From Glycera tridactyla (Eukaryota), in NCBI GenBank assembly GCA_965644265.1, contig OZ286463.1, positions 109,740,001 through 109,804,000 of the forward strand: 64,000 nt of DNA. The letters are read 5' to 3'. Position numbers and translations under genes: made by a program. The notes beneath the pieces were generated by a model. That model was given only the letters and a program-made list of their open reading frames with translations, searched no databases and had not been told where the DNA came from. This document shows positions 3,075-18,603 of this stretch, piece by piece. Each line of letters opens with the position of its first letter. Positions within the stretch are counted from its first letter, which is position 1.

Positions 3075-3382
3075 ATGTACCATATCTTTTTGCACATGCC
3101 TGGAAGCGGGTGGAAAAATCACACTCTTCTTGAAAACATGGGGCAGCCAGACAATCTTAATTGTGCATATTCAAAGTTCAATACATGGGATGCAAACAGT
3201 ATATTCCACTCTAAAGATATATCACAGAAAACTTTTATAGAAGACCTTTACCATCGATTGGCAGACTTCATTCACCACATCCTCAAGTGAGACCACCACC
3301 AAGATTGTTACATAACTAAAGATGGCCAAGAATTTGTTTGGGAAGAATTCCAGGCATTCTTCAATTGTAAACACATGCAAAT
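3075..3382 (+). pseudogene. Decayed retroelement integrase-core relic, left half, interrupted by the gypsy insertion
   Basis: Translation ...AYSKF...ILK*DHHQDCYITKDGQEFVWEEFQAFF resembles the rve pattern DAHSKW...SDNGPQFVSEEFQAF; contains an in-frame stop. Confidence 0.4.
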
Positions 3383-5176
3383 TGTAACATTGCCGAGTAG
3401 GGTAGCGTTCACCATCAACATTTCACCATGGGTTAGTAAACAGGTAGGCAGTAAATGAAAACATTCACGTCAACTTGATTTAAATAGAAAATAACAAATA
3501 TTTATTCAACCTTAGACAGGAGAATTTATACGCAGTGTGACATGTAAAATGATGATTCAATTCAATTCAATAATTGTACAAGTATCATAGAAGGAGATTT
3601 TGCACCCCAGCTGATGACAATCTGGAATGATTCAGTAGATCTTGTCAATAACAACCACCTCTACAGGTAGACCATCACATAACACGGGCACTCAATAAAT
3701 AAAATCAGGGTTAGAAATCCATTGCAGGACCAATCACTTGCATGCCCTACCAATCAAGGACCAAAGGAGAATCTACCGGAGCAGGTAAAATTTGGGGTAA
3801 TTCCATGCAGGAATTTCCTTGAATGCCAATCTGGCCTCAATGACAAGGGGCTATTTCATATTTCTTGGCCTAAAATTTCCAATCAGATGCCAAATTTCCA
3901 AATGACTTTTCAGCATGAACTACAACCTTGCAGGTACATGATTACCAAACAGGAACCCTCACCTTAGGCTATAACCAGCCAAGTGGTTTAGATTCTGGAC
4001 AGCTATAAGGACACCAAGGACAGGACCATTCACTTTGGCAGCTAGAACCAGAATGAGGACTGCTGTCACTGGCCCATATTTATAGACTTGGCAATTCTGG
4101 CAGCCACGCCCCCAAACCGGTGCCTAAGCCAATCAACGCCATGGAAACTGGGTCAACATGGATGCCGCCAATTTTAATTCTGACAGCTACAAGTTGAATT
4201 TCCATCAATCTTCATCGTTTTTGACCTCAAAACTATGATTTATATAGCAAACTAGCCAGAAAATGCATTATTCTCAACATTTGGAGAAAGAAATGGCCAC
4301 AACAGTTGATAAAATGAGCGAAATAGGCGCCAAAGTGCAGGGGCAGAATTACATCTTGTCAGAATTGAAGTGGCAGAAATACCTAGCAGACAGCATGGCT
4401 TTCAATGTAAGTTTTACTCAATTTTACACCTTATTCATGCTAAACTCTGGGTGGGGTTTGGAGAAATACTAAAAAGCTATCTATTTTGAAGTATAAAAAC
4501 TGGTTTTGGAATTTATTTTGACGAATCTGTCACTTGAATCAGTGCCAAGATCAGCGATCGTGTCAGACTGGTTGTCAGCGTATCAGAACTGTCAGAATTC
4601 GAGCACAGGCACCAAATCACCCTGAAAACTGCTCAATTAACCCAAAATAAGCCCAAAACTCACATATTTCTGCACATTTCCTGATAAATAATTGATTTAG
4701 AGGTCCAAAACAAACAGGAAGTAGATTATTGGTTTGTTTACAATGATGCCTCCCGATCTTTGACAGGTAAAAACGATCTTTTCTAGGGCTAGAAAATGGG
4801 GTCTGACAGCCACAAATGTGCTTATTTCCACTCCAAACTGTGTGTTATTGATGATTCTCAGGCCCAACTACCCTATGAAGATGTGAATTGCTCATTTGAC
4901 AGCAGAATGCCCCTAAAAACAATCTATATCACTTGACATGTTTGCATACAGGGTGCTGTCAGATGAACAGTGAGCTAGTCAAAAGACACTCAGTGGAAAA
5001 CTAGGCCTGTCAGCCACAAACAGAGATCACCAGCAGCATATTGGCATTTTCATATAATGTGCTGTCAGAAAAGTGAAAACTAGTCACAAGACACTCAGCA
5101 GAAAACTAGGCCTGTCAGCACAAGCAGAGATCTCCAGCAGCATCATGCCAACAAAACAGCATGCTGGTTTGTTACA
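3383..5176 (-). repeat. 3' LTR (1794 bp)
   Basis: Same sequence as 16806-18599 in all segments compared by eye; preceded on the minus strand by a polypurine tract. Confidence 0.98.
3501..3506 (-). terminator. Candidate polyadenylation signal in the 3' LTR
   Basis: AATAAA on the minus strand, downstream of the predicted TSS-equivalent position (4054) and 118 nt from the LTR end. Confidence 0.5.
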
Positions 5177-5189
5177 CTCCTCCTTCCTT
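5177..5189 (-). other. Polypurine tract
   Basis: AAGGAAGGAGGAG on the minus strand, directly abutting the TG start of the 3' LTR. Confidence 0.92.
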
Positions 5190-5302
5190 AAGTTCTTCAC
5201 TCCGTGAAGACGAGAATAAAAATTATACTGGAGTTCCCGGCGGAACCATAATATAACAAAAATACTGAAATGGTATTTAACACCCACGTGGCCGGAAACG
5301 AA

Positions 5303-5670
5303 TTAGTCGCCGACACTGGCTACAACTCGGCAGTTCTCCCGACGATGGAATGTTAGTCGCCAAAACTGGCTCCGAGTTGACTCAAAAATACTCGTAATAG
5401 TCGCCAAAACTGGCTCAGAGATACTGCGATATCATGTATTAGTCACCAAAACTGGCTCAGAGATACTGCGATATCATGTATTAGTCACCAAAACTGGCTC
5501 AGAGATGCCGCGATATCATGTATTAGTCACCAAAACTGGCTCAGAGATGCCGCGATATCATGTATTAGTCACCAAAACTGGCTCAGAGATACTGCGACAT
5601 CATGTATCAGTCGCCACAACTGGCTCCAACTTGTCTAAAAATTATTCAGATAATCGGCAAAACTGGCTCA
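5303..5670. repeat. Tandem repeat, 42-bp unit (5 near-perfect plus about 4 diverged copies), upstream of the PPT
   Basis: Unit caaaactggctcagagatactgcgatatcatgtattagtcac at 5405, 5447, 5489, 5531 and 5573; the core tagtc(g/a)ccaaaactggct is kept in the flanking diverged units. Confidence 0.95.
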
Positions 5671-6070
5671 GATTTGGAGAAATACAGTGGAAAAAAGGAT
5701 AGGGTCACATATGTATAGTCACAGTTACCTGGGGTTACCACAAGGTAGACCCCTCACACCCAAACCAGATATTTTTGAACAGAATTCCTCTCCATGTACA
5801 TGTCAACCAGGAAGAATACATGTGAACATGCTGCAATCATTTCAATGGTAAATCCCGAAAACGCAATTTAAACCCGACCCGCTCAACATGAGGGGGCATT
5901 GCCACAACGATACATTTTACCAAAGCCCATTTAGATATTCACTACACTTCATGTCATCTGGAGTTGCACTGGTGACTTTGCACTGGAAATTGGGAGAAAT
6001 CTCACTCCATACAGCTGACTGACTGACTGTCTAACTGACAGACAGATGGACAGACGGACAGACACTTATG

Positions 6071-6074
<4 letters not shown>

Positions 6075-6156
<82 letters not shown>
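6075..6156. repeat. (CA)n microsatellite inside the retrotransposon
   Basis: About 41 CA units. Confidence 0.98.
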
Positions 6157-6158
<2 letters not shown>

Positions 6159-7055
6159 TGCATTTAATTCATCTTACTCATTTCCAGTTCACCAGGTGAC
6201 ATGCCCAAAACTCTTGAGTAAATGTAACCTCACTCAGTTGTCTCAATATTTACAAAGCATCAACTGAGTATGACTGTATATGTGAATTCTTTCTTGCATA
6301 CTCACATGCATGCACACACACATACACACACATTCACACAAATACCNNNNNNNNNNNNNNNNNNNNNNNNNNNNNNNNNNNNNNNNNNNNNNNNNNNNNN
6401 NNNNNNNNNNNNNNNNNNNNNNNNNNNNNNNNNNNNNNNNNNNNNNNNNNNNNNNNNNNNNNNNNNNNNNNNNNNNNNNNNNNNNNNNNNNNNACTTTAG
6501 TTGCCTTCTGGCAAATACATGGCACATCTAACCCTGTTTTACAAACAGCAAGGACGGAGATACGTGGCATTTTCACCATATCAAGCAGCATGGTGCAAAT
6601 AATTGAAAAGAGCAGGTTTTAAACCACTGCTGGTTGAACTTATATATACTGTACAATTGTAGTCAGTTGACTGAGGAGAGATCACAGAGCGACTTACAAA
6701 AAGAAAAAAAATGGCTACCATCACAGGAGAGCACAGCTCCTTACAGGAGCTAACTGAGATACCGGAGCTAATTGATGATGTACGTAAAAACAACAATCAT
6801 TGCCAAGCCCGTGAAACTTCTTATCATGCTTCATGAATAAAGCACCATATAAAACCTGTTTCTGGTTACACTTATTTGAACTAAGGGTAACAATTGAATT
6901 GTATGTATGATATACACTTGAAATATTTTACCGTTCATGAACAGCCATATTCAATCAATAACCCTGCTTTTGTTTTCTTTCTGTTTCAGGTATGACAACA
7001 GCCAGAATCAAGGAGACTCAGGCTCTAAGAAGAAATATTTATATAATAACATCAC

Positions 7056-7190
7056 ATTGAATCAGGATGACTCAATGGGGAATCGAACCCCGTCCACATG
7101 ACCAGCCCAAAAATAAGCCTTACCACACAGAAACCACACAGGAATATCCTCAGTCAAACTGAGGGGGGAATCGAACCCCAATACATGGCC
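7056..7190 (-). ncRNA. Two tRNA T-arm / B-box-like structured modules immediately 3' of ORF4
   Basis: GGGG-TTCGATT-CCCC at 7179-7165 and 7091-7077, each preceded by GGYCATG and followed directly by a hairpin of different sequence. Confidence 0.45.
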
Positions 7191-7207
7191 TCATACGGAC
7201 GGAAATA

Positions 7208-8440
7208 CTAATCTTCCTTGTATGACACCGGGATCTTCGCTTCCTGGAAAAGCTTGATTATCCAGGCTGTCTTCTGCTCACGAAACATCATCCTCAGGTT
7301 AGCTATCGCAGGGCTACCGGCCAACCTGCCTGCCTTCGACAGTTGGCTCACGTGCCGGTACATATGAGCCCGGGTATGTAGAAGCTCGATGTCTGCAGGG
7401 TCTTTCGGAACTGGCAAGGGCTTTGATCCCGGCAGCATGAGGAAATTATATCTTGCCACCAGAGGATGGGGGTCACAGGTAATACTGGGACGGCTGCCAT
7501 AGATCCGTTTCTCCAAGTCAACCATCAAAAGAAAGGCGGCCTGGTAGCGGCGGTCAGCGTCCATCTCCTCCCAGTCTTGCGGTGGCCAGTTTTCGGTACC
7601 ATCTTGATAAGGCAAGGTGATGAACCGCGTCTTGGATGAAAAGTCCCGCCTTGCTGGTGGAAGAAACGGGAGACAGCCCTCCTCCATGATCCTCCCTGCC
7701 GACACCGTGAACGGGACTGGGGGGCTAGGTGTAACTGGCCCTGTCGAAACTAGACAAGGGGTGACCGGCAAGGCAGGTGATGGATCACACGCCTCGATGA
7801 CTGGTTGCACTCGCGTGATTGGGGTAGGCCCGTAGGTCGGACCACCCATGGCCCCTTGCCACCCTGGTGAGTATGGCATTTCCACTGGCGTCTGGGACGG
7901 CGAATATGGTTGCTTCGATGGCGCTGGAGAGGCCCACAGATTGGCAGAGGTGTTGGCCGGGAGATTCTCCAACGGTGCCTTCCTTTTACGGATCACCGAC
8001 CTCTCCACGGCCAGCGCCCAAGTTGCCTGAATCTCCTCCATTGATGGGCCCTCCTCTTTCCGGCAGTTCGCCAAGACGAGCCGTACCCATGGCCGGGCTT
8101 CCACGTTGTCCTTCGGGCATGGCCGAGAGCACCAGGCATAATAGAGTGGCTTCGTGCTCAGGTAAAAACACGCTTTGCGTGTGAATGATGCCGGCGGAAT
8201 ATTCTCTGTGTCATGTTCAGCCATGGCATGGACTCTGAACCGGGCCACCTTGGTAAAGGTCTGGCGGCACCAGGGGCAGGCCACCTCACATGCCCGGTGC
8301 AACCCCTCAAGGTGGTTCAACTGATCCTTCATCGTTGCAAAGGAAACATCACACTCCTTCACCATGCACTTGATGCTTTGCAGCGTCTCCATTGCTGTAA
8401 TCAGAGATACCCCATGCATTAGCTTCATGAACTTCCCCAT
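7208..8440 (-). CDS. Accessory ORF4: 410-aa protein with two N-terminal C2H2-like fingers, a basic NLS, a Pro/Ser-rich linker and an unknown C-terminal globular domain
   Basis: CMVKECDVSFATMKDQLNHLEGLH (CX4CX12HX4H) and CPWCRQTFTKVARFRVHAMAEH (CX2CX12HX4H); RKRKAP; an intact 1233-nt ORF in a GC-rich segment flanked by AT-rich DNA. Confidence 0.85.
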   Translation of the reverse strand: MGKFMKLMHGVSLITAMETLQSIKCMVKECDVSFATMKDQLNHLEGLHRACEVACPWCRQTFTKVARFRVHAMAEHDTENIPPASFTRKACFYLSTKPLYYAWCSRPCPKDNVEARPWVRLVLANCRKEEGPSMEEIQATWALAVERSVIRKRKAPLENLPANTSANLWASPAPSKQPYSPSQTPVEMPYSPGWQGAMGGPTYGPTPITRVQPVIEACDPSPALPVTPCLVSTGPVTPSPPVPFTVSAGRIMEEGCLPFLPPARRDFSSKTRFITLPYQDGTENWPPQDWEEMDADRRYQAAFLLMVDLEKRIYGSRPSITCDPHPLVARYNFLMLPGSKPLPVPKDPADIELLHTRAHMYRHVSQLSKAGRLAGSPAIANLRMMFREQKTAWIIKLFQEAKIPVSYKED

Positions 8441-8547
8441 ACACTGGGTTAGTATGAACAAGAGGGGATGGCTACCATGCTTGGCATTTCAACTCAAAAC
8501 TTCAAGAAAAAAAAAAATGAAGAAAACTGAAGGAAATCAATCAGGCT

Positions 8548-9336
8548 CTACAGCTCTCCATCAGGATGCAGGTCCAGCTCCCAGTCACTCTCATCTTCAG
8601 CACCACTATCATGAAACACATCCTTGGCAGGAGCCCCAGCATCAAACTGCATGTCACCGAAGGATGGTCCTTTTGAGGCCTTCCATTTCCTTCTCGGATT
8701 CTGGGTGGCCACCGCCTCCTCAGGTGGGACACCTCCAACCGCCCCCAAAACAGGGGACGGCCTTGCTGGAGATCTCCCCGGAAGCGGTCCACCCAACCTG
8801 ATGACCCTTCTCTCGTCCTGCGGCAGAGCCGCTTCGAATTTGTGTAGATCGGCCCGCCTGACAGGCAGGTCCGATCCGACCGGGATGGTGACCCCATGAA
8901 CCTTGCGGTAGTGCCGCCGAATCTCATCCCGCCTATACTTAACGACGTCACAAGATACACATTCATAACTCTTGGCGGACGCTGGCCTAGCACAAACTGT
9001 GCGCAAATGTCGATTCAGGCCCTTTCGCTTGGCAAAGGATGCCCCACATTGTGAGCACTGGCATTCAGCCTCAGCTGCCACTTGATTCGGCTCATGGCCC
9101 ACCTCCACCGGGAAATCAAGGTTGGTGGATGTCCCCTTGTCCATATGTGTGGGGCGGTCTCCCTCAGGCCTCCGATACGGAGCAAATCTCCATGGAGTAG
9201 GGCTGTCCTTTACACCAGGACGATCGATCGAGACCTGGGGCTCTGACACATGTCTCCCTGCACGGGATCCATGGCCAGGCTCTACCCTCCGCTTTCCCTC
9301 AACCATACTGACTACGAAATTCTCCCAAGTCATCAT
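8548..9336 (-). CDS. Accessory ORF3: 262-aa protein with two zinc fingers (C2HC and C2H2) and an acidic C-terminus
   Basis: CSQCGASFAKRKGLNRHLRTVC and YECVSCDVVKYRRDEIRRHYRKVH; ATG lies 3 nt after the acceptor-like ttttctttccttgttacag (AG at 9341-9340); C-terminal EDESDWELDLHPDGEL. Confidence 0.8.
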   Translation of the reverse strand: MMTWENFVVSMVEGKRRVEPGHGSRAGRHVSEPQVSIDRPGVKDSPTPWRFAPYRRPEGDRPTHMDKGTSTNLDFPVEVGHEPNQVAAEAECQCSQCGASFAKRKGLNRHLRTVCARPASAKSYECVSCDVVKYRRDEIRRHYRKVHGVTIPVGSDLPVRRADLHKFEAALPQDERRVIRLGGPLPGRSPARPSPVLGAVGGVPPEEAVATQNPRRKWKASKGPSFGDMQFDAGAPAKDVFHDSGAEDESDWELDLHPDGEL

Positions 9337-10396
9337 GAACTGTAACAAGGAAAGAAAATATGATGATAGACCTCAGTCTAAACTATACTTCTTTGGATAT
9401 CTACAAAATTGTCAACAATTTATCGGCGATGGCATCTCCTATATTCAAAGGAACATTTTCCCACCCATATATACACAGGACATCCCGGGTGGATGGTGCC
9501 AGGCCAGGCAAAGTATAAAAGTCATCTGTCAAGAGAGACAAGCAGAGATACAGCAGCATTTAATTTCTGACTCCATTCCAAAATCATGGCTGAGATGAAT
9601 CTACTGATTTCACCCCACTCACAAACCCTCAACCATACAAGAACTGGACACTGTTCTACCTCTGCACCCACGAGACTCCCTTTTCACCCTGACATGACAG
9701 CTCTACCGCACCCTGAACTGAGAAAGACAATCCATTACGTGTAAAGTATCCACTTTACCATGCTGATAGGGTGATCAGTCCTATCTGAAAACTGGGGCCC
9801 CAGACCTTACACCTTGCAGGGTTTTTTTTAGTTCCTTTTCCCATGTCACTAGGCTGGATGCAGAAGGCCAACTTGCACCTTCCTATTCAGAACCACCAAA
9901 CCCATGTACCAGTTCTACAAGACTTTGACTGAAACTGACTCATATGATAATTGTTTAATTAATTTATTTATTGTCCTTATTATTATTATTATTATTATCA
10001 CTATTATGGCAGGACATCCAGAACATCCCGAATTAGCAACATCAAGCAGCTATGGATACTCTATGCTGGAGTCCAACAAATGTAAACAAGATAAGGAAAC
10101 ATAAAATACAATGTCTAAAATAATTTCCTTTCCTGCTATAGCACCATTGCATGGGGAGCACTTTTGAGAAGTGTGGAGACATGTATTTCGCCTAATAAAA
10201 CGAATATATTTTTTTTTTTCTATATTTCCTTCAACATGACATAATCCTAGGTACAAGGATGGAACTTCAGCCTCAATCTTTTTCTTTTATTCCTATGATC
10301 TGAAATCATTTGTTTCCACTCAATGCCTCATATATTAAGGTCCCATTCATATTGGCATGCAGCCTGAGATCACAAAAATGCTAGTTCCCAAAAGTG

Positions 10397-10456
10397 CCAC
10401 CAGATGGCACCCTCAACCTTCTCTCCCTGGAGCACCCTATTCACACTAGATGGCAG
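10397..10456 (+). promoter_or_regulatory. Two tandem CTCF-like motifs inside the retrotransposon
   Basis: CCACCAGATGGCAC (10397-10410) fully matches CCASYAGRKGGCRS; ACACTAGATGGCAG (10443-10456) has one mismatch. Confidence 0.5.
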
Positions 10457-11431
10457 GGCTGCATAATGGGCAGGGTTACCCAGGGCAACTAAAGAGTGGG
10501 GGACCATGCCACCCTGCAGTGTGATTTTTCACAGTCCCTTTTTCAACATGTTAAAATACACTTTATGGGCATCATTTTCAAGTTTTAATGCCTGCCAAGA
10601 GTTCCAGCAGTGCCCAAGAAGAATCATGTCACTCCAAAGCAAGCAAAATTCACTAGATGCTGGATAATCTGGGTAAGTTCATTCCTCCTTCTCCCTATTT
10701 CAGCACATGCTTCCCCAGCCCAGGGAAAGCACATGGTTCTTCAATCCTGTGGAAGCTGGTATCAGTATTCACAGGAGCTGCTTCATTTGCCTATTGGAAT
10801 AGCATGCCACTAGATTTTACCATTTTATTACAGGGCTGTCTGCAGAATTTACTTTAGCAATACTGGGCAAATGGACAGAAAAACATGACAATAACCTGCC
10901 TATCAAGAAAATCAACCTGCCCATAAAAATTGACCTGCCCATCCAAAAAATCAACCGGCCCATTTATGATCAATTTTCACCTGCCCACCATGAACAGGTG
11001 ACCTGCTCTGGGCAGGTTTACATGTATCTCATCTCACCCTGGGCCATCAAATTGAGCTTTGAAAACAAATGTTTTTTTTTTTTATGTACACATGAGCTCA
11101 ACAATCTAAAAGGTGAATGATTGGCTACCTTCAATATATTCCACAGTGAATCTCTAATCATGGGGGCACTTTTCTTAAATTATCTATCAATTATTACGGG
11201 GTCAATTCACAGAAATATACAAATAAAAGGAACTCTAATGACAGGAGGGCCATCCTCCTTCCTTATTCATTAATGTGGTCTTTCCACAGCTGGAGTTGGT
11301 GTACAACTCCATTTCTTTTCAGTATGCTGGAAATAGGCCTGTCACCCTTGAATGTTTTTTTTAGCTAACTGAACATGACAAGAACTGCTGCTCATCTCAG
11401 TCAACCTCTCTCTTCAACTGCATGACTGTAT

Positions 11432-14400
11432 CTATGCCTGTTCCCCGCACTGAACAGGTCGAAACCAGGTTGGCCGGTTACGCCCATGGTACGCCTTCAA
11501 GCGATCAACATGATAAACACGAGGCTGAGCGCATCGACCTGCCTGGACCCTGTATGTGACTGCATCCAAACACTCAATCACAACCTGTGGCCCCTTCCAA
11601 GGAGAAGTCAACTTGGAACAAACTCCAACTTTTCTTGTTGGGCGTAGAACCCACACAGCATCTCCAACCTGGAAAGTGCGCATTCGAGCATTGAGATCGT
11701 AATAGCGACGTTGATACACAGCACTTTGCTTCAACTGCCCCCTGGCTTCATCATGTACATTCCTCAACTTTTCCTGCAACTTTGCAAGATAATCATCACT
11801 TGTCACAGCTTCATCCTCCTCATCAGGCTGAGCAATTACAGCCTCCAGTGGCATTGTAATCTGGCGCCCATACATCATTTCATTAGGAGTTTTCCCAGTA
11901 GATGACTGAACTGAAGCGCGATATGCCATGAGCACCAGAGGCAGGTACTCATCCCAGGTATCTTGATGTTTCTCAGCATACATAGTGAGCATTGCGCCAA
12001 GAGTGCGGTTGAATCTCTCAATATTCCCATTCGACTGGGGCCTTGCAACAGAAGTCTTCGTCTTGTCAATATGGAGGTACTTGCAGACTTCCTTGAATAA
12101 GGCAGAGTCGAAGTTGGTACCACGATCACTATGAAGTTGTCGAGGTGCCCCATGCCGAGCAACAAATTCTTCCACAAAGACTCTGGCCACAGTGGCAGCT
12201 TCCTGATTTGGAAGTGCGTAGGCCTCAGTGTACTTGGTGAACTGGTCCCCTACCACCAACACAAAGCGATTCTGGCGCTTAGTGACTGGAAGAGGACCCA
12301 TGATGTCAAGGGCCACACGCTCCATTGGACTACCCACCAGGTATTGCTGGAGAGGTGCTTTGGTTTTAGACAGTGGTGGCTTCCTGGCAACACATCTGTC
12401 ACATGTACGGCAATAGTTGCTCACAGTCTTGCTCATTCCTGGCCAGTAGAAGTGCATCTTCACTCTCTCCAGGGTTTTCTCGCCTCCCAGATGACCACCA
12501 CTTGGAATATCATGATAGAATTTGAGCAAACTCTCCTGGCGGGACACCGGAACAATAAGTTGAAAAGTACCCTCGCCACCGCAGTCATCAACCCACCGGC
12601 GATAGAGCATGCCGTCACAGACTTGCAAACGATCCCAGTGACGCCATAATGTCTTGAATGCACTTGAACTTGCAGAGATCTCTGACCATCCAGGTTGTGG
12701 CTTCCCTTCCTCCAGAGCAGACATGATTGGACCGATATTACTGTCAGCTAACTGGTCGAGTCGTATGTCCGCAGGTTCCCATCCCTCGAGCCATGCTTGG
12801 TTATGTTTTAGGCTACTCCGAGATGACACTTGCCCGCGTGTGATTGCACGAACTGACACATGACGCCGCTCACATTGGTTTCTCTGCACCTTGAGTAGGA
12901 CTCTCACTGCTCTCACTGCAGCCTGGGCCTTGGCTTCACTCTCAAGATGTTCCGTGTCACTGTTGGTGTGTGCCGTCGCTGGCACCTCGATCCCCAGGAC
13001 TGCATTCTCATCACAATTATCTGCTTCCTCAGGCAAACCCAACCGTGCACCCTCTGCGTCAGGTACAAGTGACATTGCTCCGGGAATGTTTGCAGTTTGT
13101 TGTGAACTGCTGGAATCTGCCTCCATCACTGGAGCACCTTCCATTGCAGACACATTCAACTCATTTTGTCTCTCACATGATCTGCACGGGCACCGGGACA
13201 ATGCATCCGCATTGCGGTGCTTGGTACCTGCCCGGTGGACAACTGTAAGGTCGTAAGTAGCCAACTCCTCCAGCCATCTTGCTGTCTGGCCCGTTGGACA
13301 CTTGAGATTTCTCATCCAGCTTACTGCTGCATTATCCGTCCTGAGCAAGACTGGTTGGCCATACAGGTATGGTCTGAACTTTCTCAGTGCACATACCACA
13401 GCCAATAACTCTTTCCGGGTCACACAGTAATTCTGCTCCTCCCTTGTCATGGCCTTACTGTGATAGGCTATCACTCGCTCCCTCTCTTCCTGGACTTGAG
13501 ACAACACCGCTCCTATGGCTTTGTCACTTGCATCTGTGTCGAGAATGTATTCCTTGCCAGGAATAGGGTAAGCCACAATAGGTGCAGTAATCAGCTTCTC
13601 GCGGAGAGTAACAAAAGCCTCCTGACACTCTTCTGTCCATTCAAATGGCCGATTCTTCTCTGTAGCTTTATGTAGAGGTCTTGCCACATGCGCAAAATCA
13701 GCGACCAGACGGCGATAATACCCACAAAGACCTACAAATGCGCGTATTTCACGGGTACTGGTGGGCACAGGCCAGTTTTTCACTGCCTCAATCTTTGATG
13801 GATCTGTCCGAATCCCATCTGGAGTCACGATATGACCGAGGAAAAGGACCTGTTGCTTGAAGAAATGACATTTTGATGGTTTGAGTTTCAGACCAGCTCC
13901 TGCCAGTCGCTGGAATACTCTCTCAAGTCTCTGCAGACATTCTGAGATAGTACTGCCATAGGAAATTATATCATCAACAAAAAGCAAGCACTCTTCAAAT
14001 TGGAGGCCACGCAGCACATTTTCCATCAAGCGTTCAAATGTCGCAGGGCTATTCGTCAAACCAAATGGCATGGTTTTAAAGTGATAAAGCCCGAAGCTTG
14101 AAGCGAATGCAGTCTTTTCTTTGTCCTCTTCAGCAACTGGAATTTGCCAGAACCCAGACTGGACATCCATACTTGAGTAGAACTTCGCCCCCTGCAAGGC
14201 GTCCAGACAGTCGTCAATACGAGGGAGAGGGTAGGCGTCTTTTTGCGTGACATCGTTCAAGGCCCGAAAGTCGATGCAAAATCTCGTAGCACCACATTTC
14301 TTCTTCACAAGCACGACAGGACTCGCCCACGGACTAGTGGAGGGCTCAATAATCCCATACTTCAACATCTTGTCAATTTCATCTCGCTCGATTTCACGCT

Positions 14401-15529
14401 TTCCGATTGGTTGTCGGCGAGGTCTTTGCTTGTTTGGAGCTGCATTGCCAGTATTGATCCTGTGCTTGACAAGATGTGTGCACCCTAAATCACCAGGCCC
14501 TTTTGAGAAAACATGCTGATAATCATTGAGCAAAATAATGAAGGCCCCTTTTTCACTATCATTGAGGAGCTCAGCACTTGTCAAGAACAGTTCTTTCAGA
14601 TGGTCAGGTACTTGTTCAATGAGAGGCTTTCCTTCCACCACCTTCATAGCTGCAACTCTCCTGACAGGAGGGGAGTCTGTCTCATAGTATGATTCACAGG
14701 TACCAATTGTGGTGCCCGCACGCAGCTTCATAGGCTTCTCATAGGGGTTTATCAGCAATACACTTGAATCCGCCTCCTGTGGGGCTACTATGCCTGGTAT
14801 AAGTATCACATTGTGGTAGCTCAGCAAATTCACATCAGGCTCCACCAGCCCATTTTCAGCCAACCTTGTCGCTCGAGGGATAGTGACCTTGACCTTGACA
14901 CCACTTTCAGGTGGCAAGGTGACTTGATCTCTGACCCTCACCTGACACACCACAGCACTCTTACTCCCCAGCCAGCAGGGGATATCTTGATATTTGGTGG
15001 TCAGGATGGCTCTTCTGTAGTCCAGCTTATATACATGCTGTGTGATGAAATCATTTCCCAGGATAGCATCTTGCACAATATTGGCCACAATGACAGGATA
15101 TCTGTATGTTACATCCCCCAGTCGGATTAATATTGTCATCTCTCCATGAGTGGTTAGCCTGGTCCCATCAGCTGTCTGTAGTCCAAATCTAGGCTCATTC
15201 AATTTCAAGTTTGGGTTTTTCCTCATCATACCCTCAAATGTTGTCTCAGATACGAGTGTTACAGTTGAGCCAGTATCAAGCAGAAAATCCACAGGGAGGC
15301 CCTGAACATGGCCAGTCACAAAGAAGCCATTGTCATATACTGGACCATCGGCAACCTGCCCGATTCTTTTGTTTTCACAGCACTGATTTCCATCACTCCC
15401 ATGTGTTTCACTCTCTTTGATTTTTAACGTGGGCGGTTCCTGAGGGAGGTCCCTTCGATCAGGCCCTTTTTCACACCCCTGGGCTGGGCCTACTGAACCA
15501 GAGGACGCTCGTTTCCCTGTTGAGAATTC
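11432..15529 (-). CDS. pol: Pol polyprotein (protease, reverse transcriptase, RNase H, integrase), in the -1 frame relative to gag
   Basis: The frame is open from 15529 (70 codons upstream of the track's start) and overlaps the gag end. Motifs: LLDTGS (PR); YPLPRIDD, FGLTNSPATF, LFVDD (RT); DTDAS (RH); HX6H...CX2C, ALDIMGP/HSDRG/NIERFN DDE and SPWKGP (IN). No internal stops. Confidence 0.97.
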   Translation of the reverse strand, partial: EFSTGKRASSGSVGPAQGCEKGPDRRDLPQEPPTLKIKESETHGSDGNQCCENKRIGQVADGPVYDNGFFVTGHVQGLPVDFLLDTGSTVTLVSETTFEGMMRKNPNLKLNEPRFGLQTADGTRLTTHGEMTILIRLGDVTYRYPVIVANIVQDAILGNDFITQHVYKLDYRRAILTTKYQDIPCWLGSKSAVVCQVRVRDQVTLPPESGVKVKVTIPRATRLAENGLVEPDVNLLSYHNVILIPGIVAPQEADSSVLLINPYEKPMKLRAGTTIGTCESYYETDSPPVRRVAAMKVVEGKPLIEQVPDHLKELFLTSAELLNDSEKGAFIILLNDYQHVFSKGPGDLGCTHLVKHRINTGNAAPNKQRPRRQPIGKREIERDEIDKMLKYGIIEPSTSPWASPVVLVKKKCGATRFCIDFRALNDVTQKDAYPLPRIDDCLDALQGAKFYSSMDVQSGFWQIPVAEEDKEKTAFASSFGLYHFKTMPFGLTNSPATFERLMENVLRGLQFEECLLFVDDIISYGSTISECLQRLERVFQRLAGAGLKLKPSKCHFFKQQVLFLGHIVTPDGIRTDPSKIEAVKNWPVPTSTREIRAFVGLCGYYRRLVADFAHVARPLHKATEKNRPFEWTEECQEAFVTLREKLITAPIVAYPIPGKEYILDTDASDKAIGAVLSQVQEERERVIAYHSKAMTREEQNYCVTRKELLAVVCALRKFRPYLYGQPVLLRTDNAAVSWMRNLKCPTGQTARWLEELATYDLTVVHRAGTKHRNADALSRCPCRSCERQNELNVSAMEGAPVMEADSSSSQQTANIPGAMSLVPDAEGARLGLPEEADNCDENAVLGIEVPATAHTNSDTEHLESEAKAQAAVRAVRVLLKVQRNQCERRHVSVRAITRGQVSSRSSLKHNQAWLEGWEPADIRLDQLADSNIGPIMSALEEGKPQPGWSEISASSSAFKTLWRHWDRLQVCDGMLYRRWVDDCGGEGTFQLIVPVSRQESLLKFYHDIPSGGHLGGEKTLERVKMHFYWPGMSKTVSNYCRTCDRCVARKPPLSKTKAPLQQYLVGSPMERVALDIMGPLPVTKRQNRFVLVVGDQFTKYTEAYALPNQEAATVARVFVEEFVARHGAPRQLHSDRGTNFDSALFKEVCKYLHIDKTKTSVARPQSNGNIERFNRTLGAMLTMYAEKHQDTWDEYLPLVLMAYRASVQSSTGKTPNEMMYGRQITMPLEAVIAQPDEEDEAVTSDDYLAKLQEKLRNVHDEARGQLKQSAVYQRRYYDLNARMRTFQVGDAVWVLRPTRKVGVCSKLTSPWKGPQVVIECLDAVTYRVQAGRCAQPRVYHVDRLKAYHGRNRPTWFRPVQCGEQA
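15461..15517 (-). other. -1 programmed ribosomal frameshift signal (slippery heptamer plus H-type pseudoknot)
   Basis: G_GGA_AAC in the gag frame (15517-15511), a 6-nt spacer, stem 1 CCUCUGG/CCAGGGG and stem 2 AGGCCC/GGGCCU; pol is in the -1 frame. Confidence 0.85.
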
Positions 15530-16575
15530 TCAACATTAGCTCTGCAGTACTTCTTGATGTGACCATTGCCTCCACAGCCATAGCAGAGTGGACCCTGTGG
15601 ACAGCTATACTTCTGGTGATCATCACCACCACACCTCCAGCAGGTGACCTCATTTCCTTTAGGACCATAGAATTTCCTGTCAGAATTACCAGGAGCCTTC
15701 TGTGTGGAGACAGCTTTCTCCAAGTTTTCCAGTTTTTTCAGGATCTCACCTTGTGTTGTGGATTCAGTTGATTGATTAACAGCCCGAACTGGCCGCTTTT
15801 TGTCCCCACACAGTGCCTCATACTGTTCCACAATCGCCACCGCTTCATAAAGAGTTTCACATTTACTCTTGATGCATTCATATTTCAGCTCAAATGGTAT
15901 GGTCTTGTAGAACTGCTTCAGTGCAAGAACCTCCTGGGCACGAGAGCTCAAATCGTTGTAAGCACGAATAGCCATCCTGTGTAGATCATCTGCCAGGGCG
16001 GAAACAGTCTCGCCAGACTGGCGACGCCTGCCTTCCAGCTGTGCAGCCCAGACTTCACGCTGTCGCATGGTTCCAAAACGCCGGGTAAGGGCAGCCACCA
16101 GGTGTTGGTAGCTTCTTTTCTCATTTGGAGCCAAACTCATGTAGTAGATTCTCGCTCGGCCTTTCAAGCTGGCTGAGAGAACAAGCTTCTTCATGCGTGG
16201 ATCCCATTCACTCAACTCTGCACAATCTTCGAAGTGTGACAGGTAGGATTCCCAGTCCTGTTCTCCATTATAACTTTCAGGCTTCATTGATACGCGCTTA
16301 CAGGGAGGGCGCCTCCTCCTAGCAGGAGGAGTTCTCCCAGCATGGATTGTATTTGCAGGAGCCTCGTCTTCATCATCACCCTCCTCTTCGCCATCGTCAT
16401 CATTCTCTGACTCTGACTCAGGAGGGATCTCATCATCTATCAAGTCTACAGCGCCCAACGGAGCATTGAAACCATCCCCAGAGCTGGGGTCACGGGTCTC
16501 TAGCTCATCATTTCCTTTCCCAGGGACACCCATCAGGGACTTTCTGAATGTAACATCAGGATCATATTCCGCCAT
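15490..16575 (-). CDS. gag: Gag (361 aa from MAEYDP): acidic/basic N-terminus, retrotransposon capsid-like core, two CCHC zinc knuckles
   Basis: Open ORF; KPESYNGEQDWESYLSHFE...LKGRARIYY capsid-like region; CWRCGGDDHQKYSC and CYGCGGNGHIKKYC (CX2CX4HX4C twice). First ATG at 16575; the track's TTG start at 16638 is upstream. Confidence 0.95.
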   Translation of the reverse strand: MAEYDPDVTFRKSLMGVPGKGNDELETRDPSSGDGFNAPLGAVDLIDDEIPPESESENDDDGEEEGDDEDEAPANTIHAGRTPPARRRRPPCKRVSMKPESYNGEQDWESYLSHFEDCAELSEWDPRMKKLVLSASLKGRARIYYMSLAPNEKRSYQHLVAALTRRFGTMRQREVWAAQLEGRRRQSGETVSALADDLHRMAIRAYNDLSSRAQEVLALKQFYKTIPFELKYECIKSKCETLYEAVAIVEQYEALCGDKKRPVRAVNQSTESTTQGEILKKLENLEKAVSTQKAPGNSDRKFYGPKGNEVTCWRCGGDDHQKYSCPQGPLCYGCGGNGHIKKYCRANVENSQQGNERPLVQ

Positions 16576-16786
16576 CTTTATTTGTACTGCCAACGACTGG
16601 AATAACCTAAACTGACTGATGCTGAATGTAAACCCCAAGTGCTGGATAAGTGATGCAAGAAGAGAGAAAGAAAGTAAGAAAAGAAAAATTAAATTTGAAT
16701 CGCAATCACAGGAAATTATTGGCCAAAGTTCAAAATATCTTCTGAGATAAGGTTCGTATCATGGGATACCAAATTTAATTTTTAGT

Positions 16787-16804
16787 ATCCCACCGCTGCC
16801 ACCA
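16787..16804 (-). other. Primer-binding site complementary to the 3' end of tRNA-Leu
   Basis: Minus strand TGGTGGCAGCGGTGGGAT lies 1 nt after the 5' LTR. It is the complement of ATCCCACCGCTGCCA+CCA, the 3' end of metazoan tRNA-Leu (AAG/TAG type) as I recall it. Confidence 0.9.
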
Positions 16805-16805
16805 T

Positions 16806-18599
16806 TGTAACATTGCCGAGTAGGGTAGCGTTCACCATCAACATTTCACCATGGGTTAGTAAACAGGTAGGCAGTAAATGAAAACATTCACGTCAACTTG
16901 ATTTAAATAGAAAATAACAAATATTTATTCAACCTTAGACAGGAGAATTTATACGCAGTGTGACATGTAAAATGATGATTCAATTCAATTCAATAATTGT
17001 ACAAGTATCATAGAAGGAGATTTTGCACCCCAGCTGATGACAATCTGGAATGATTCAGTAGATCTTGTCAATAACAACCACCTCTACAGGTAGACCATCA
17101 CATAACACGGGCACTCAATAAATAAAATCAGGGTTAGAAATCCATTGCAGGACCAATCACTTGCATGCCCTACCAATCAAGGACCAAAGGAGAATCTACC
17201 GGAGCAGGTAAAATTTGGGGTAATTCCATGCAGGAATTTCCTTGAATGCCAATCTGGCCTCAATGACAAGGGGCTATTTCATATTTCTTGGCCTAAAATT
17301 TCCAATCAGATGCCAAATTTCCAAATGACTTTTCAGCATGAACTACAACCTTGCAGGTACATGATTACCAAACAGGAACCCTCACCTTAGGCTATAACCA
17401 GCCAAGTGGTTTAGATTCTGGACAGCTATAAGGACACCAAGGACAGGACCATTCACTTTGGCAGCTAGAACCAGAATGAGGACTGCTGTCACTGGCCCAT
17501 ATTTATAGACTTGGCAATTCTGGCAGCCACGCCCCCAAACCGGTGCCTAAGCCAATCAACGCCATGGAAACTGGGTCAACATGGATGCCGCCAATTTTAA
17601 TTCTGACAGCTACAAGTTGAATTTCCATCAATCTTCATCGTTTTTGACCTCAAAACTATGATTTATATAGCAAACTAGCCAGAAAATGCATTATTCTCAA
17701 CATTTGGAGAAAGAAATGGCCACAACAGTTGATAAAATGAGCGAAATAGGCGCCAAAGTGCAGGGGCAGAATTACATCTTGTCAGAATTGAAGTGGCAGA
17801 AATACCTAGCAGACAGCATGGCTTTCAATGTAAGTTTTACTCAATTTTACACCTTATTCATGCTAAACTCTGGGTGGGGTTTGGAGAAATACTAAAAAGC
17901 TATCTATTTTGAAGTATAAAAACTGGTTTTGGAATTTATTTTGACGAATCTGTCACTTGAATCAGTGCCAAGATCAGCGATCGTGTCAGACTGGTTGTCA
18001 GCGTATCAGAACTGTCAGAATTCGAGCACAGGCACCAAATCACCCTGAAAACTGCTCAATTAACCCAAAATAAGCCCAAAACTCACATATTTCTGCACAT
18101 TTCCTGATAAATAATTGATTTAGAGGTCCAAAACAAACAGGAAGTAGATTATTGGTTTGTTTACAATGATGCCTCCCGATCTTTGACAGGTAAAAACGAT
18201 CTTTTCTAGGGCTAGAAAATGGGGTCTGACAGCCACAAATGTGCTTATTTCCACTCCAAACTGTGTGTTATTGATGATTCTCAGGCCCAACTACCCTATG
18301 AAGATGTGAATTGCTCATTTGACAGCAGAATGCCCCTAAAAACAATCTATATCACTTGACATGTTTGCATACAGGGTGCTGTCAGATGAACAGTGAGCTA
18401 GTCAAAAGACACTCAGTGGAAAACTAGGCCTGTCAGCCACAAACAGAGATCACCAGCAGCATATTGGCATTTTCATATAATGTGCTGTCAGAAAAGTGAA
18501 AACTAGTCACAAGACACTCAGCAGAAAACTAGGCCTGTCAGCACAAGCAGAGATCTCCAGCAGCATCATGCCAACAAAACAGCATGCTGGTTTGTTACA
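16806..18599 (-). repeat. 5' LTR (1794 bp)
   Basis: Direct repeat of 3383-5176 at a constant offset of 13423; the ORF track gives identical peptides at 3722/17145 and 4263/17686; TG...CA ends; the PBS follows on the minus strand. Confidence 0.98.
17446..17556 (-). promoter_or_regulatory. LTR core promoter: CCAAT, GC/KLF box, TATA, Inr, DPE
   Basis: CCAAT at 17552-17556; GGGGGCGTGGC at 17536-17526; TATAAATA at 17507-17500; Inr TCATTC with +1 at 17477 (30 nt from the TATA); GGTCC at +28 to +32 fits the DPE consensus RGWYV. Confidence 0.7.
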
Positions 18600-18603
18600 A
18601 AAT

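What the first reader, a model, noticed from the sequence alone, without database searches (positions are those of the whole stretch)
7208..8440. ORF4: zinc-finger pair plus an unrecognised C-terminal domain and Pol II CTD-like YSP repeats
Seen: after two C2H2-like fingers comes an aromatic segment (FTRKACFYLSTKPLYY), then RKRK, then a linker with PYSPSQTP, PYSPGW and TYGPTP plus many SP/TP sites. The last about 160 aa form a globular-looking domain (CLPFLPPARRDF...WPPQDW...YQAAF...LEKR...RYNFLMLPGS) that I cannot assign to a named family. From memory, similar motifs occur in hypothetical mollusc proteins, but this is unverified. Inference: a DNA-binding/effector fusion; the YSPxxxP motifs could mimic the CTD heptad YSPTSPS and recruit CDKs or WW-domain proteins.
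Basis: partly seen in the sequence, partly recalled or inferred. Interest (0 to 1): 0.75.

Follow-up and report, generated by a model that had tools for sequence, protein, structure and literature searches.

The report
Zinc-finger accessory gene of a retrotransposon
The open reading frame is real and is the last gene of an intact-looking Ty3/gypsy retrotransposon; it encodes two zinc fingers, a flexible linker and a conserved C-terminal domain with no known relative, an apparently undescribed accessory protein whose named relatives are in bivalve molluscs.

Summary
ORF4 (minus strand, 7208-8392/8440) is real. It is the fourth gene of a 15.2-kb Ty3/gypsy-type LTR retrotransposon (3383-18599) with identical 1794-bp LTRs and a 4-bp target duplication, ordered gag, pol, ORF3, ORF4. 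About 100 cluster representatives share its domains, and more than 30 have its full layout: two C2H2 fingers with a helical extension, a variable linker, and a roughly 160-residue C-terminal domain. In 6 of 6 relatives with enough flank the gene follows a gypsy-type pol; one of these is a complete element in the clam Mercenaria mercenaria.

The C-terminal domain is conserved and folds confidently (pLDDT 89.7). It matches nothing in Pfam, in PDB sequences, or by Foldseek against PDB and BFVD. The protein has no membrane segment, so it is not an envelope protein.

The YSP motifs exist and exceed chance, but there are only three. They are spaced 11 and 13 residues apart, and they recur only in the nearest relative, so the Pol II CTD-mimic idea is not supported.

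My best reading is a nuclear, nucleic-acid-binding accessory or regulatory protein made from a spliced subgenomic RNA. The fingers would bind the element's DNA or RNA and the C-domain would dock a partner protein. The function itself is inferred. I rate it a new variant of a known kind, of moderate interest.

The parts
3383..18599 (-). Whole LTR retrotransposon (15,217 bp): 5' LTR, gag, pol, spacer, ORF3, ORF4, repeat-rich 3' region, 3' LTR
   Evidence: The two LTRs are 100% identical. Termini are TG..CA, with a flanking 4-bp duplication AAAT at 3379-3382 and 18600-18603. No second copy and no solo LTR occurs in the window.
16806..18599 (-). 5' LTR (1794 bp)
3383..5176 (-). 3' LTR (1794 bp)
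16788..16804 (-). Primer-binding-site-like sequence starting TGG, one base after the 5' LTR
   Evidence: Read directly from the sequence. The matching tRNA was not tested.
15490..16638 (-). gag-like ORF (open frame 382 codons; first ATG at 16575)
   Evidence: Weak Pfam hits to PNMA, zf-CCHC and SCAN. It is 35-43% identical to the gag of related elements.
11432..15529 (-). pol (protease, reverse transcriptase, RNase H, integrase). The listed ORF is 15319..11432, but the frame stays open 70 codons further upstream and overlaps the end of gag in another frame.
   Evidence: Pfam: RVT_1 3.7e-33, RT_RNaseH_2 2.9e-34, Integrase_H2C2 1.5e-19, rve 5e-11, gag-asp_proteas, Integrase_p58_C.
9349..11431 (-). 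About 2.1-kb spacer between pol and ORF3, with no minus-strand ORF of 70 aa or more. It holds two short blocks conserved with relative L001 (9755-9814 and 9666-9694).
8548..9336 (-). ORF3 (262 aa from the ATG pair): a second protein with two C2H2 fingers and a distant paralogue of ORF4's N-terminal module. A pyrimidine tract ending in CAG lies 3 nt before its ATG.
   Evidence: Pfam zf-C2H2_4 4e-5. hhalign against the N-domain profile gives probability 91%, E 1e-6. A 54% identical homologue sits in the same position in L001/L002.
7208..8392 (-). ORF4, the finding: 394 aa plus stop from the conserved start M17.
7985..8392 (-). ORF4 N-terminal domain (residues 17-152): finger 1 (8297-8374), finger 2 (8213-8284) and a four-helix extension that contains the aromatic segment (8138-8185)
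   Evidence: AF2 pLDDT 89.3, pTM 0.80. The top Foldseek PDB hits are all tandem C2H2 fingers, but they are not significant. All 8 zinc ligands and P98 are present in 100% of relatives, and F92, Y101 and W141 in 90% or more.
7700..7984 (-). ORF4 linker (residues 153-247): begins with the RKRK patch, is 24% proline, carries three Y[SG]P motifs (7886-7909, 7859-7876, 7820-7837) and 9 S/T-P sites
   Evidence: Composition and shuffle tests are. In relatives the linker is variable in both length and composition.
7220..7699 (-). ORF4 C-terminal domain (residues 248-407): a conserved globular domain with no known family or fold match
   Evidence: 88-sequence alignment A1; G255, P258, R265, W285, P286, P287, L334, L336 and G338 are present in 90% or more. 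AF2 pLDDT 89.7, pTM 0.84. No match in Pfam, in PDB by profile, or by Foldseek in PDB or BFVD.
8393..8454 (-). Splice-acceptor-like context of ORF4: a branch-point-like TACTAAC (8448-8454) inside a 13-nt block identical in L001, then a pyrimidine-rich stretch ending in CAG 2 nt before the ATG
   Evidence: Inferred from sequence only; no transcript data were available.
5177..7207 (-). About 2-kb non-coding 3' region of the element: polypurine tract abutting the 3' LTR (5177-5189), a 42-bp tandem repeat of 6.5 copies (5353-5626), a (CA)43 microsatellite (6071-6156) and an N run (6347-6493)

Best explanation
ORF4 is a conserved accessory gene of a lineage of Ty3/gypsy (Metaviridae-type) LTR retrotransposons. 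It sits after pol, where retroviruses carry env, but it is a soluble protein and probably nuclear. I think it works as a modular adaptor.
- The basic N-terminal module (two C2H2 fingers packed onto a helical extension) binds nucleic acid, most likely the element's own DNA or RNA.
- The disordered linker carries a basic patch and proline-directed Ser/Thr sites that could regulate the protein.
- The conserved C-terminal domain docks a protein partner.

The outcome would be control of the element's expression or of the fate of its RNA. In role, not ancestry, that is comparable to the CERV protein of C. elegans Cer1 or to the transactivators of complex retroviruses. The gene is probably expressed from a spliced subgenomic RNA.

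Shown: membership of the element, conservation, domain layout, confident folds, absence of known homologues, absence of membrane segments.
Inferred: nucleic-acid binding, nuclear location, splicing, partner docking, and the regulatory role.

Conserved position:
- In L003, L004, L005, L006, L007 and L009 the homologue follows a pol that is 45-54% identical to the window's pol.
- L009 is a complete LTR-gag-pol-ORF-LTR element on a Mercenaria mercenaria chromosome.

Conserved under selection:
- 108 representatives, 32 of them with both domains.
- pN 0.21 against pS 0.82.

Fingers:
- All zinc ligands are invariant.
- The AF2 model is confident, and the best Foldseek hits are DNA- or RNA-bound tandem C2H2 fingers.
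- The N-domain is basic in 33 of 34 members.

C-domain:
- pLDDT 89.7.
- The most conserved residues are G, P, W, L and R rather than a catalytic-looking set. This fits a binding module.
- The same domain is joined to a kinase-like half in two Pecten genes, so it behaves as a portable module.

Not an envelope protein:
- Maximum 19-residue hydropathy is 0.93.

Splicing:
- An AG preceded by a pyrimidine-rich stretch lies 0-3 nt before the start ATG in window ORF3, window ORF4, L001 ORF3, L001 ORF4, L004, L005 and L009.
- A conserved TACTAAC lies upstream of ORF4.

Precedent:
- Cer1 CERV is a nuclear, S/T-P-phosphorylated protein with a candidate Cys finger. It is encoded after pol on a spliced mRNA and is needed for export of the element's genomic RNA (PMC10309623).
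Against: - No direct evidence exists for binding, localisation, splicing or any effect on the element.
- The fingers fall below Pfam's thresholds (12-14 bits against 25-27).
- The Foldseek matches to C2H2 fingers are weak (E 0.15-0.8, about 60 columns).
- Two fingers alone usually give limited specificity.
- The positions expected to contact bases are variable in finger 1 and only partly conserved in finger 2. This does not tell DNA from RNA, or a target in the element from a target in the host.
- The RKRK patch is not a family feature: a run of four basic residues occurs in 14 of 33 linkers.
- 'No known fold' rests on PDB and BFVD only. No AlphaFold DB search was available.
- The nearest relative (L001) has a decayed C-terminal part, so individual copies can lose it.
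Confidence: 0.5

Rival explanations
1. DNA-binding transactivator specifically. The fingers would recognise sites in the element's long LTR or its internal repeats, and the C-domain would recruit host transcription machinery, as transactivators of complex retroviruses do.
For: The layout matches a transcription factor: DNA-binding-type fingers, a basic patch, a disordered linker and an effector domain. The LTR is unusually long (1794 bp) and has internal 40-nt repeats, and a 42-bp tandem array lies in the 3' region. Finger 1's recognition positions vary between elements, as expected if each element recognises its own sites.
Against: No binding sites were identified, and two fingers cover only about 6 bp. 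Nothing in the data separates DNA binding from RNA binding. This is a more specific version of the best explanation, not independent of it.
Confidence: 0.25
2. RNA-handling cofactor. The protein would bind the unspliced genomic RNA and promote its nuclear export, stability or packaging, as Cer1 CERV does.
For: The closest documented precedent is in a Ty3/gypsy element (PMC10309623). The acceptor-like sites imply that the element is spliced, which creates the need to export unspliced RNA. Short blocks in the pol-ORF3 spacer are conserved with L001, one of them containing a small inverted repeat. S/T-P sites in the linker parallel CERV's regulatory phosphosite. Both domains are basic.
Against: No homology to CERV was shown, and I could not fetch its sequence to test this. 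No RNA element has been defined, and the conserved blocks are known from two sequences only.
Confidence: 0.2
3. Integration-targeting or anti-silencing factor. The protein would tether the integration complex to particular chromatin, or would counteract host repression, through its C-domain.
For: Other mobile elements use separate DNA-binding accessory proteins to guide their enzymes, for example the Myb-like protein of PIF/Harbinger transposons (established knowledge). The integrase here shows no chromodomain in Pfam. The C-domain also occurs in host kinase-like genes, which hints at a host pathway partner.
Against: No insertion-site data are available. Only two target duplications were seen (AAAT and ATAG). 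No interaction evidence exists.
Confidence: 0.1
4. One reading: the YSP motifs mimic the RNA polymerase II CTD and recruit CDKs or WW-domain proteins as the protein's main mechanism.
For: All three tyrosines of the linker are followed by [SG]P. This is unlikely by chance (shuffle P 0.003 for 2 YSP, below 0.0005 for 3 Y[SG]P). The motifs are kept in P0001 at 48% overall identity.
Against: There are three motifs, not an array, and the spacing is 11 and 13 residues rather than 7. In the wider family 22 of 33 members lack YSP in the linker, and linkers differ greatly in length and composition. No PPxY motif is present.
Confidence: 0.05
5. Envelope-like or other structural protein in the env position.
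For: Only its position after pol.
Against: There is no hydrophobic segment that could be a signal peptide, fusion peptide or membrane anchor (maximum hydropathy 0.93; 29 of 32 relatives also stay below 1.6). No structural match to viral proteins was found in BFVD or PDB. It has zinc fingers and a basic patch instead.
Confidence: 0.02

Closest known systems
CERV of the C. elegans Ty3/gypsy element Cer1 (PMC10309623)
   Same: [quoted passage not shown] CERV has a candidate Cys finger, a regulatory S/T-P phosphosite, a spliced mRNA, nuclear location, and no homologues outside its host group.
   Different: No sequence relationship was shown or could be tested here. CERV is made from five exons partly in the gag frame. 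Here the ORF has its own ATG right after an acceptor-like site. CERV has no classical C2H2 pair or this C-domain as far as the paper describes.
Transactivators and RNA-export factors of complex retroviruses (for example the foamy virus transactivator and Rev-type proteins)
   Same: Small regulatory proteins encoded at the 3' end of the genome. They are expressed from spliced RNAs, are nuclear, and bind the element's own DNA or RNA while recruiting host factors.
   Different: No structural or sequence match to any viral protein was found (BFVD best E about 1). The element is a gypsy-type retrotransposon without env. The likeness is one of role only.
Classical tandem C2H2 zinc fingers (two-finger DNA binders such as Tramtrack, PDB 2drp; WT1, CTCF, INSM1)
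   Same: Ligand spacing, beta-beta-alpha secondary structure in the model, and the best Foldseek hits.
   Different: The fingers fall below Pfam thresholds. The inter-finger spacer is not the usual conserved linker. The fingers are fused to a conserved four-helix extension (residues about 77-152) that has no match.
Additional ORFs or domains captured by other LTR retrotransposons (for example the ALKBH demethylase domain in orchid Ty3/gypsy elements, PMC9289625; extra ORFs in bdelloid rotifer elements, cited in PMC13524379)
   Same: The same general phenomenon: a lineage of LTR elements fixes an extra gene that is then conserved.
   Different: The proteins are different and unrelated. Here the protein is a finger module plus a domain without any known family.
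Pecten maximus LOC117321388 and LOC117315076 (uncharacterised, kinase-like)
   Same: Both carry the same C-terminal domain, with the motifs around GC.P.LPPARR, WPPQDW and YN.L.LPG (33% identity to the window over about 100 residues).
   Different: The N-terminal half is a protein-kinase-like domain, not fingers. P0002 is a multi-exon gene spanning 18 kb with no gag or pol nearby. The locus of P0094 could not be retrieved.

Membership tests
Ty3/gypsy (Metaviridae-type) LTR retrotransposon (the element that carries ORF4) | Two direct long terminal repeats with TG..CA ends, flanked by a short target-site duplication | tested here: met
   LTRs are 1794 bp and 100% identical, with TG..CA ends and a 4-bp duplication AAAT.
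Ty3/gypsy (Metaviridae-type) LTR retrotransposon (the element that carries ORF4) | pol domain order: protease, reverse transcriptase, RNase H, integrase | tested here: met
   Pfam hits run in that order along the 1295-aa ORF.
Ty3/gypsy (Metaviridae-type) LTR retrotransposon (the element that carries ORF4) | Primer-binding site next to the 5' LTR and polypurine tract next to the 3' LTR | tested here: inconclusive
   Sequences of the right kind sit in the right places. Complementarity to a host tRNA was not tested.
Ty3/gypsy (Metaviridae-type) LTR retrotransposon (the element that carries ORF4) | gag with capsid and CCHC nucleocapsid knuckle | tested here: inconclusive
   Only weak Pfam hits were found (PNMA 1.2e-3, zf-CCHC 2.3e-3, SCAN 2.9e-3). 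The ORF is homologous to the gag ORFs of related elements.
Classical C2H2 zinc finger | C-x2-4-C-x12-H-x3-5-H ligand spacing, with the ligands conserved | tested here: met
   Both fingers fit the spacing, and all 8 ligands are present in 100% of aligned relatives.
Classical C2H2 zinc finger | Score above the Pfam gathering threshold for a C2H2 model | tested here: not met
   The best score is zf-C2H2_4 at 12.1 bits against 27, E 0.37. Only 9 of 88 relatives reach E<=1e-3 for zf-C2H2.
Classical C2H2 zinc finger | Beta-beta-alpha fold | tested here: inconclusive
   The AF2 model shows strand-strand-helix twice with pLDDT above 90. The top Foldseek hits are all C2H2 fingers, with probability 0.77-0.87 but E 0.15-0.8.
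RNA polymerase II CTD-like heptad repeats | Tandem array of seven-residue units of the YSPTSPS type | tested here: not met
   There are two YSP and one YGP, 11 and 13 residues apart, and no heptad period.
RNA polymerase II CTD-like heptad repeats | Motif conserved among homologues | tested here: not met
   The motifs are kept only in P0001. In the family, 22 of 33 members have none in the linker.
Retroviral or errantiviral envelope protein | Signal peptide, fusion peptide and membrane anchor | tested here: not met
   Maximum 19-residue hydropathy is 0.93.
Retroviral or errantiviral envelope protein | Structural or sequence similarity to known fusion proteins | tested here: not met
   There are no significant hits in Pfam, PDB or BFVD.
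Cer1 CERV-type accessory protein | Encoded after pol in a Ty3/gypsy element | tested here: met
Cer1 CERV-type accessory protein | Translated from a spliced subgenomic mRNA | tested here: inconclusive
   Acceptor-like sites lie immediately before the start codons in the window and in 4 relatives. No transcript data were available.
Cer1 CERV-type accessory protein | Sequence homology to CERV | not tested
   No tool gave me the CERV sequence. Most hits are unnamed, and the few that are named are bivalve proteins.
Cer1 CERV-type accessory protein | Nuclear location and requirement for export of genomic RNA | not testable with these tools
   This needs observation in the host.

The most novel reading that the evidence does not exclude
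The C-terminal domain is a new protein fold and family. It is shared between the accessory proteins of a marine-invertebrate Ty3/gypsy lineage and host kinase-like genes in scallops. With it, the ORF4 family would be a previously unrecognised class of retroelement regulatory protein, a finger-guided adaptor that plugs the element into a conserved host pathway. ORF3 would be a second, finger-only paralogue, giving this sub-lineage a two-gene regulatory set like that of a complex retrovirus.
Probability: 0.3. Interest if true: 0.7.

Novelty: new variant of a known kind. Interest (0 to 1): 0.55.

Why it matters
Few LTR retrotransposons of animals are known to carry conserved genes beyond gag, pol and env, and in most cases nobody knows what those genes do. 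Cer1 CERV is the main worked example.

Here a whole lineage keeps a soluble zinc-finger protein with a confidently folded, unclassified domain. The lineage includes a complete element in a clam genome. The window copy has identical LTRs and four open genes, so the gene is probably still in use.

If it is a regulator, complex-retrovirus-style gene control would have arisen independently in Metaviridae-type elements of marine invertebrates. The same domain in scallop kinase-like genes also raises the question of exchange between the element and its host, in one direction or the other. At the least, the C-domain and the finger-plus-extension module deserve to be defined as families so that genome annotators can recognise them.

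Tried and rejected
- Word-index protein search with the whole ORF found one relative only. With the C-terminal region it found one, a Pecten protein. With the family alignment it found five. The index is too coarse for this family; the exhaustive phmmer search was what revealed it.
- Pfam at relaxed thresholds on the C-domain of the window and of seven short relatives gave only noise. A PDB sequence search and a PDB profile search gave only weak C2H2 hits.
- Foldseek on the C-domain model found nothing against PDB (best E 1.4, TM 0.21 or lower) or BFVD (best E about 1).
- Rfam on the whole window found no family.
- A direct ORF3-ORF4 comparison by BLASTP found nothing beyond the finger motif. 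Only the profile comparison showed the relationship.
The metagenome contig scan returned only the already known L001 contig.
- Exact look-ups of the window's own ORF4 in both start versions found nothing on record. The host organism of the window remains unidentified. P0094's locus could not be retrieved.
- Four literature searches found no description of this ORF. I checked the Troyka superfamily (PMC12440569) and rejected it: Troyka has CG..CG ends, 3-bp duplications and 100-400-bp LTRs, whereas this element has TG..CA ends, 4-bp duplications and 1.8-kb LTRs.
- dN/dS could not be computed because synonymous sites are saturated. I report pN and pS instead.
- I did not assign the element to a named gypsy clade, because no reference sequences were available through the tools.
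Full report
**1. What is at the coordinates**

The finding is an open reading frame on the minus strand. Residue numbers below use that 410-aa reading.

The aromatic segment is at residues 86-101 and RKRK at 151-154. PYSPSQTP is at 178-185, PYSPGW at 189-194 and TYGPTP at 202-207. The three C-terminal motifs are at 256-267, 285-290 and 330-339.

One correction concerns the start. Relatives begin at the position of M17, where Met is found in 97% of aligned sequences. In the nearest relative the upstream ATG is out of frame. The coding sequence is therefore most likely 8392..7208, 394 aa.

**2. The surroundings: a complete LTR retrotransposon**

- Two direct repeats, 3383-5176 and 16806-18599, are 100% identical over 1794 bp.
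- They begin with TG and end with CA, and a 4-bp duplication (AAAT) flanks them.
- On the minus strand a TGG-initiated primer-binding-like sequence follows the 5' LTR after one base.
- A polypurine run abuts the 3' LTR.
- Between the LTRs, on the minus strand, lie a gag-like ORF (16638..15490) and a 1295-aa pol. Pfam hits on pol run in the order protease, reverse transcriptase, RNase H, integrase, with the Ty3/gypsy-type models.
- These are followed by a spacer of about 2.1 kb, ORF3 (9336..8548), ORF4, and about 2 kb of repeat-rich non-coding sequence.
- The pol frame is open 70 codons upstream of its listed start and overlaps the end of gag in another frame. This is the usual frameshift arrangement, and I count no break there.
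- I found no breaks in any of the four ORFs.
- The window holds no second copy and no solo LTR.

**3. Relatives**

The word-index searches were nearly blind to this family. The exhaustive phmmer search found 108 cluster representatives at E<=1e-3 and 22 at E<=1e-10.

Re-scoring them locally showed a consistent layout in 32 proteins of 400-820 aa. An N-terminal match to residues about 23-150 and a C-terminal match to residues about 245-370/410 are separated by a linker of about 100-550 aa.

The closest relative, P0001, is 48% identical. It comes from a 2.9-kb metagenome contig that also carries an ORF3 homologue (54% identity) directly upstream. In that copy the part of the gene after the start of the C-domain has decayed. 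Three premature stops fall in the short stretch that can still be aligned, and similarity is then lost.

Other fragments cover the C-domain at 61%, 39% and 36% identity (P0003, P0007, P0009).

The only named relatives are uncharacterised proteins of bivalves: Pecten maximus LOC117321388 and LOC117315076, and Mercenaria mercenaria LOC128556870.

**4. Genomic context of relatives**

In all six relatives with enough flanking DNA, the ORF4-like gene lies just downstream of a gypsy-type pol that is 45-54% identical to the window's pol (L003, L004, L005, L006, L007, L009).

L009 is a complete element on a Mercenaria mercenaria chromosome. It has 1125-bp LTRs that are 99.7% identical, TG..CA ends, a 4-bp duplication, gag, pol and the ORF4-like gene.

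ORF4 is therefore an integral, conserved gene of this retrotransposon lineage. It evolves faster than pol: 24-38% identity in its domains against 45-54% for pol. It is still under purifying selection, with pN 0.21 against a saturated pS of 0.82 for the N-domain compared with L001.

ORF3 occurs only in the window and in L001/L002. A profile comparison shows that ORF3 is a distant paralogue of ORF4's N-terminal module (probability 91%, E 1e-6, 123 columns).

**5. The N-terminal module**

- The ligand spacing is C-x4-C-x12-H-x4-H and C-x2-C-x12-H-x4-H.
- All eight ligands and P98 are invariant in 41 sequences. F92, Y101 and W141 are present in 90% or more.
- AlphaFold2 with this alignment gives pLDDT 89.3 and pTM 0.80. 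The model has two strand-strand-helix units followed by four helices up to about residue 152.
- The best Foldseek hits in the PDB are all tandem C2H2 fingers bound to DNA or RNA. They cover only about 60 columns at E 0.15-0.8.
- Pfam C2H2 models score below threshold.
- The module is basic in 33 of 34 members.
- The positions expected to contact bases are variable in finger 1 and partly conserved in finger 2.

**6. The linker and the YSP motifs**

The window's linker is 24% proline. All three of its tyrosines are followed by [SG]P, which shuffling rarely reproduces (P 0.003 for 2 YSP, below 0.0005 for 3 Y[SG]P). S/T-P sites are also enriched: 9 against 4.3 expected. P0001 keeps the three motifs.

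The motifs are 11 and 13 residues apart, not seven. Across 33 family members, only 11 have any YSP in the linker and only 2 have two or more. Linker length and composition vary widely, and no PPxY motif is present.

The motifs are real but specific to this sub-lineage, and they do not form a CTD-like array. A role as proline-directed phosphosites is possible. CERV of Cer1 is switched by such a site (PMC10309623).

**7. The C-terminal domain**

An 88-sequence alignment shows conservation from about residue 248 to 407. G255, P258, R265, W285, P286, P287, L334, L336 and G338 are present in 90% or more of sequences.

AlphaFold2 gives pLDDT 89.7 and pTM 0.84. The model has an extended, proline-rich N-terminal strap, one beta hairpin and five main helices.

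The domain has no match in any library I could search:

| Library | Result |
|---|---|
| Pfam, all 88 members | no model hits the domain |
| Pfam, relaxed threshold | nothing meaningful |
| PDB sequences, by profile | nothing beyond weak finger hits |
| Foldseek, PDB | best E 1.4, TM 0.21 or lower |
| Foldseek, BFVD | best E about 1 |

The most conserved residues are structural types and arginines, not a catalytic-looking set. I therefore read the domain as a binding module.

No AlphaFold DB search was available, so 'new fold' remains provisional.

**8. Not an envelope protein**

The protein has no hydrophobic stretch (maximum 19-residue hydropathy 0.93). Of 32 relatives, 29 also stay below 1.6.

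**9. Expression**

In the window, a pyrimidine-rich stretch ending in CAG lies 3 nt before ORF3's ATG and 2 nt before ORF4's ATG. The same kind of site lies 0-4 nt before the start codons of L001 ORF3, L001 ORF4, L004, L005 and L009.

A TACTAAC inside a 13-nt block that is identical in L001 lies about 55 nt upstream of ORF4's ATG.

This pattern suggests 3' splice sites, and therefore spliced subgenomic RNAs as in retroviruses and Cer1. It is an inference from sequence only. I did not identify the donor with any confidence.

**10. How it most likely works**

The shown facts are:
- a soluble two-module protein;
- its fixed place after pol;
- its conservation;
- basic, finger-containing N-module;
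- a portable C-domain.

From these I infer an adaptor. The N-module would bind the element's DNA or RNA, the C-domain would bind a protein partner, and the linker would tune activity.

The regulatory outcome could be transcriptional activation or RNA export and handling. I cannot separate these two with sequence data. Less likely roles are integration targeting or countering host silencing.

I put the general adaptor or regulator reading at about 0.5. I put the narrower statement, that this is a conserved accessory gene of a Ty3/gypsy lineage, at about 0.9.

**11. Comparison with what is known**

The nearest analogue in role and position is Cer1 CERV. I could not test homology to it. The fingers are C2H2-like by ligands and model, but they fail Pfam thresholds. 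I rejected the Troyka superfamily on termini, duplication length and LTR length.

Four literature searches found no description of this ORF.

I rate it a new variant of a known kind: an extra gene in an LTR retrotransposon, but with an unclassified domain and a layout I could not find described.

**12. Limits and slips**

The host species of the window is unknown. I did not fill or examine any N run.

1. The script printed, for each column of the C-domain alignment, the commonest residue with its count. That comes close to a majority sequence of a gene of a virus-like element. I stopped, saved nothing from it, did not use it as a sequence, and printed only shares at the window's own residues afterwards.
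2. The script printed three-frame translations of the tail of the L001 relative, in which the stops of its decayed ORF4 are visible. I give only counts here.
3. In my reasoning I briefly recalled textbook host sequences from memory: a tRNA end, and a classic finger used to number contact positions. None was entered into a tool or used as evidence, and the tRNA assignment of the primer-binding site is left untested.

Noticed in passing
window 8548-9336 (minus): ORF3, just upstream of ORF4, is a second two-finger protein whose finger module is a distant paralogue of ORF4's N-domain (hhalign probability 91%). It lacks the C-domain and is present only in the window and its nearest relative, so this sub-lineage carries two accessory genes.
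   Followed up: partly
L008 (Pecten maximus CACRWE010003915.1) 10001-28091; proteins P0002 and P0094: Two scallop genes join a protein-kinase-like N-terminal half (40% identical to each other) to a C-terminal half that contains the ORF4-type C-domain and is about 97% identical between them. No gag or pol lies within L008. The uneven identity suggests that a recently copied C-terminal exon, or gene conversion, is involved. The direction of exchange between host gene and element is open.
   Followed up: partly
window 9755-9814 and 9666-9694 (minus): Two short non-coding blocks 330-480 nt upstream of ORF3 are 82% and 93% identical to L001, although the surrounding spacer does not align. The first contains a 6-bp inverted repeat around an 8-nt loop. 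It could be a regulatory or RNA element, but only two sequences are known, so there is no covariation test.
   Followed up: partly
window 5177-7207: The element's 3' non-coding region holds a 42-bp tandem repeat (6.5 copies, 5353-5626), GACA-type repeats and a (CA)43 microsatellite (about 6018-6156), and an N run (6347-6493) that I left untouched. I did not determine whether the microsatellites are original to the element or a later expansion.
   Followed up: no
window 4975-5119 and 18398-18542: Each LTR contains a 40-nt motif repeated at a 105-nt spacing (93% identical). It is a candidate regulatory repeat within the unusually long LTR.
   Followed up: no
L007 1-285 and 8282-8608: The contig carrying relative P0018 has gag-like sequence at both ends. 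This suggests that the assembly ran through tandem or LTR-joined copies of the element.
   Followed up: no
L006 14728-19770: Next to a decayed ORF4-bearing element lies a different gypsy-type element on the opposite strand. Its precomputed Pfam list names the integrase domains before RVT_1 and includes a SCAN-like gag hit. That list is only roughly ordered, and the window pol's tblastn hits there run reverse transcriptase before integrase, so its domain order is unresolved.
   Followed up: no
window 730-873, 32360-33025, 44472-44650, 48633-48814, 53637-56713: Ten N runs of 129-666 bases are scattered through the window. Several of the long mechanical ORFs outside the element are artefacts of these runs. 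I left them as they are.
   Followed up: no
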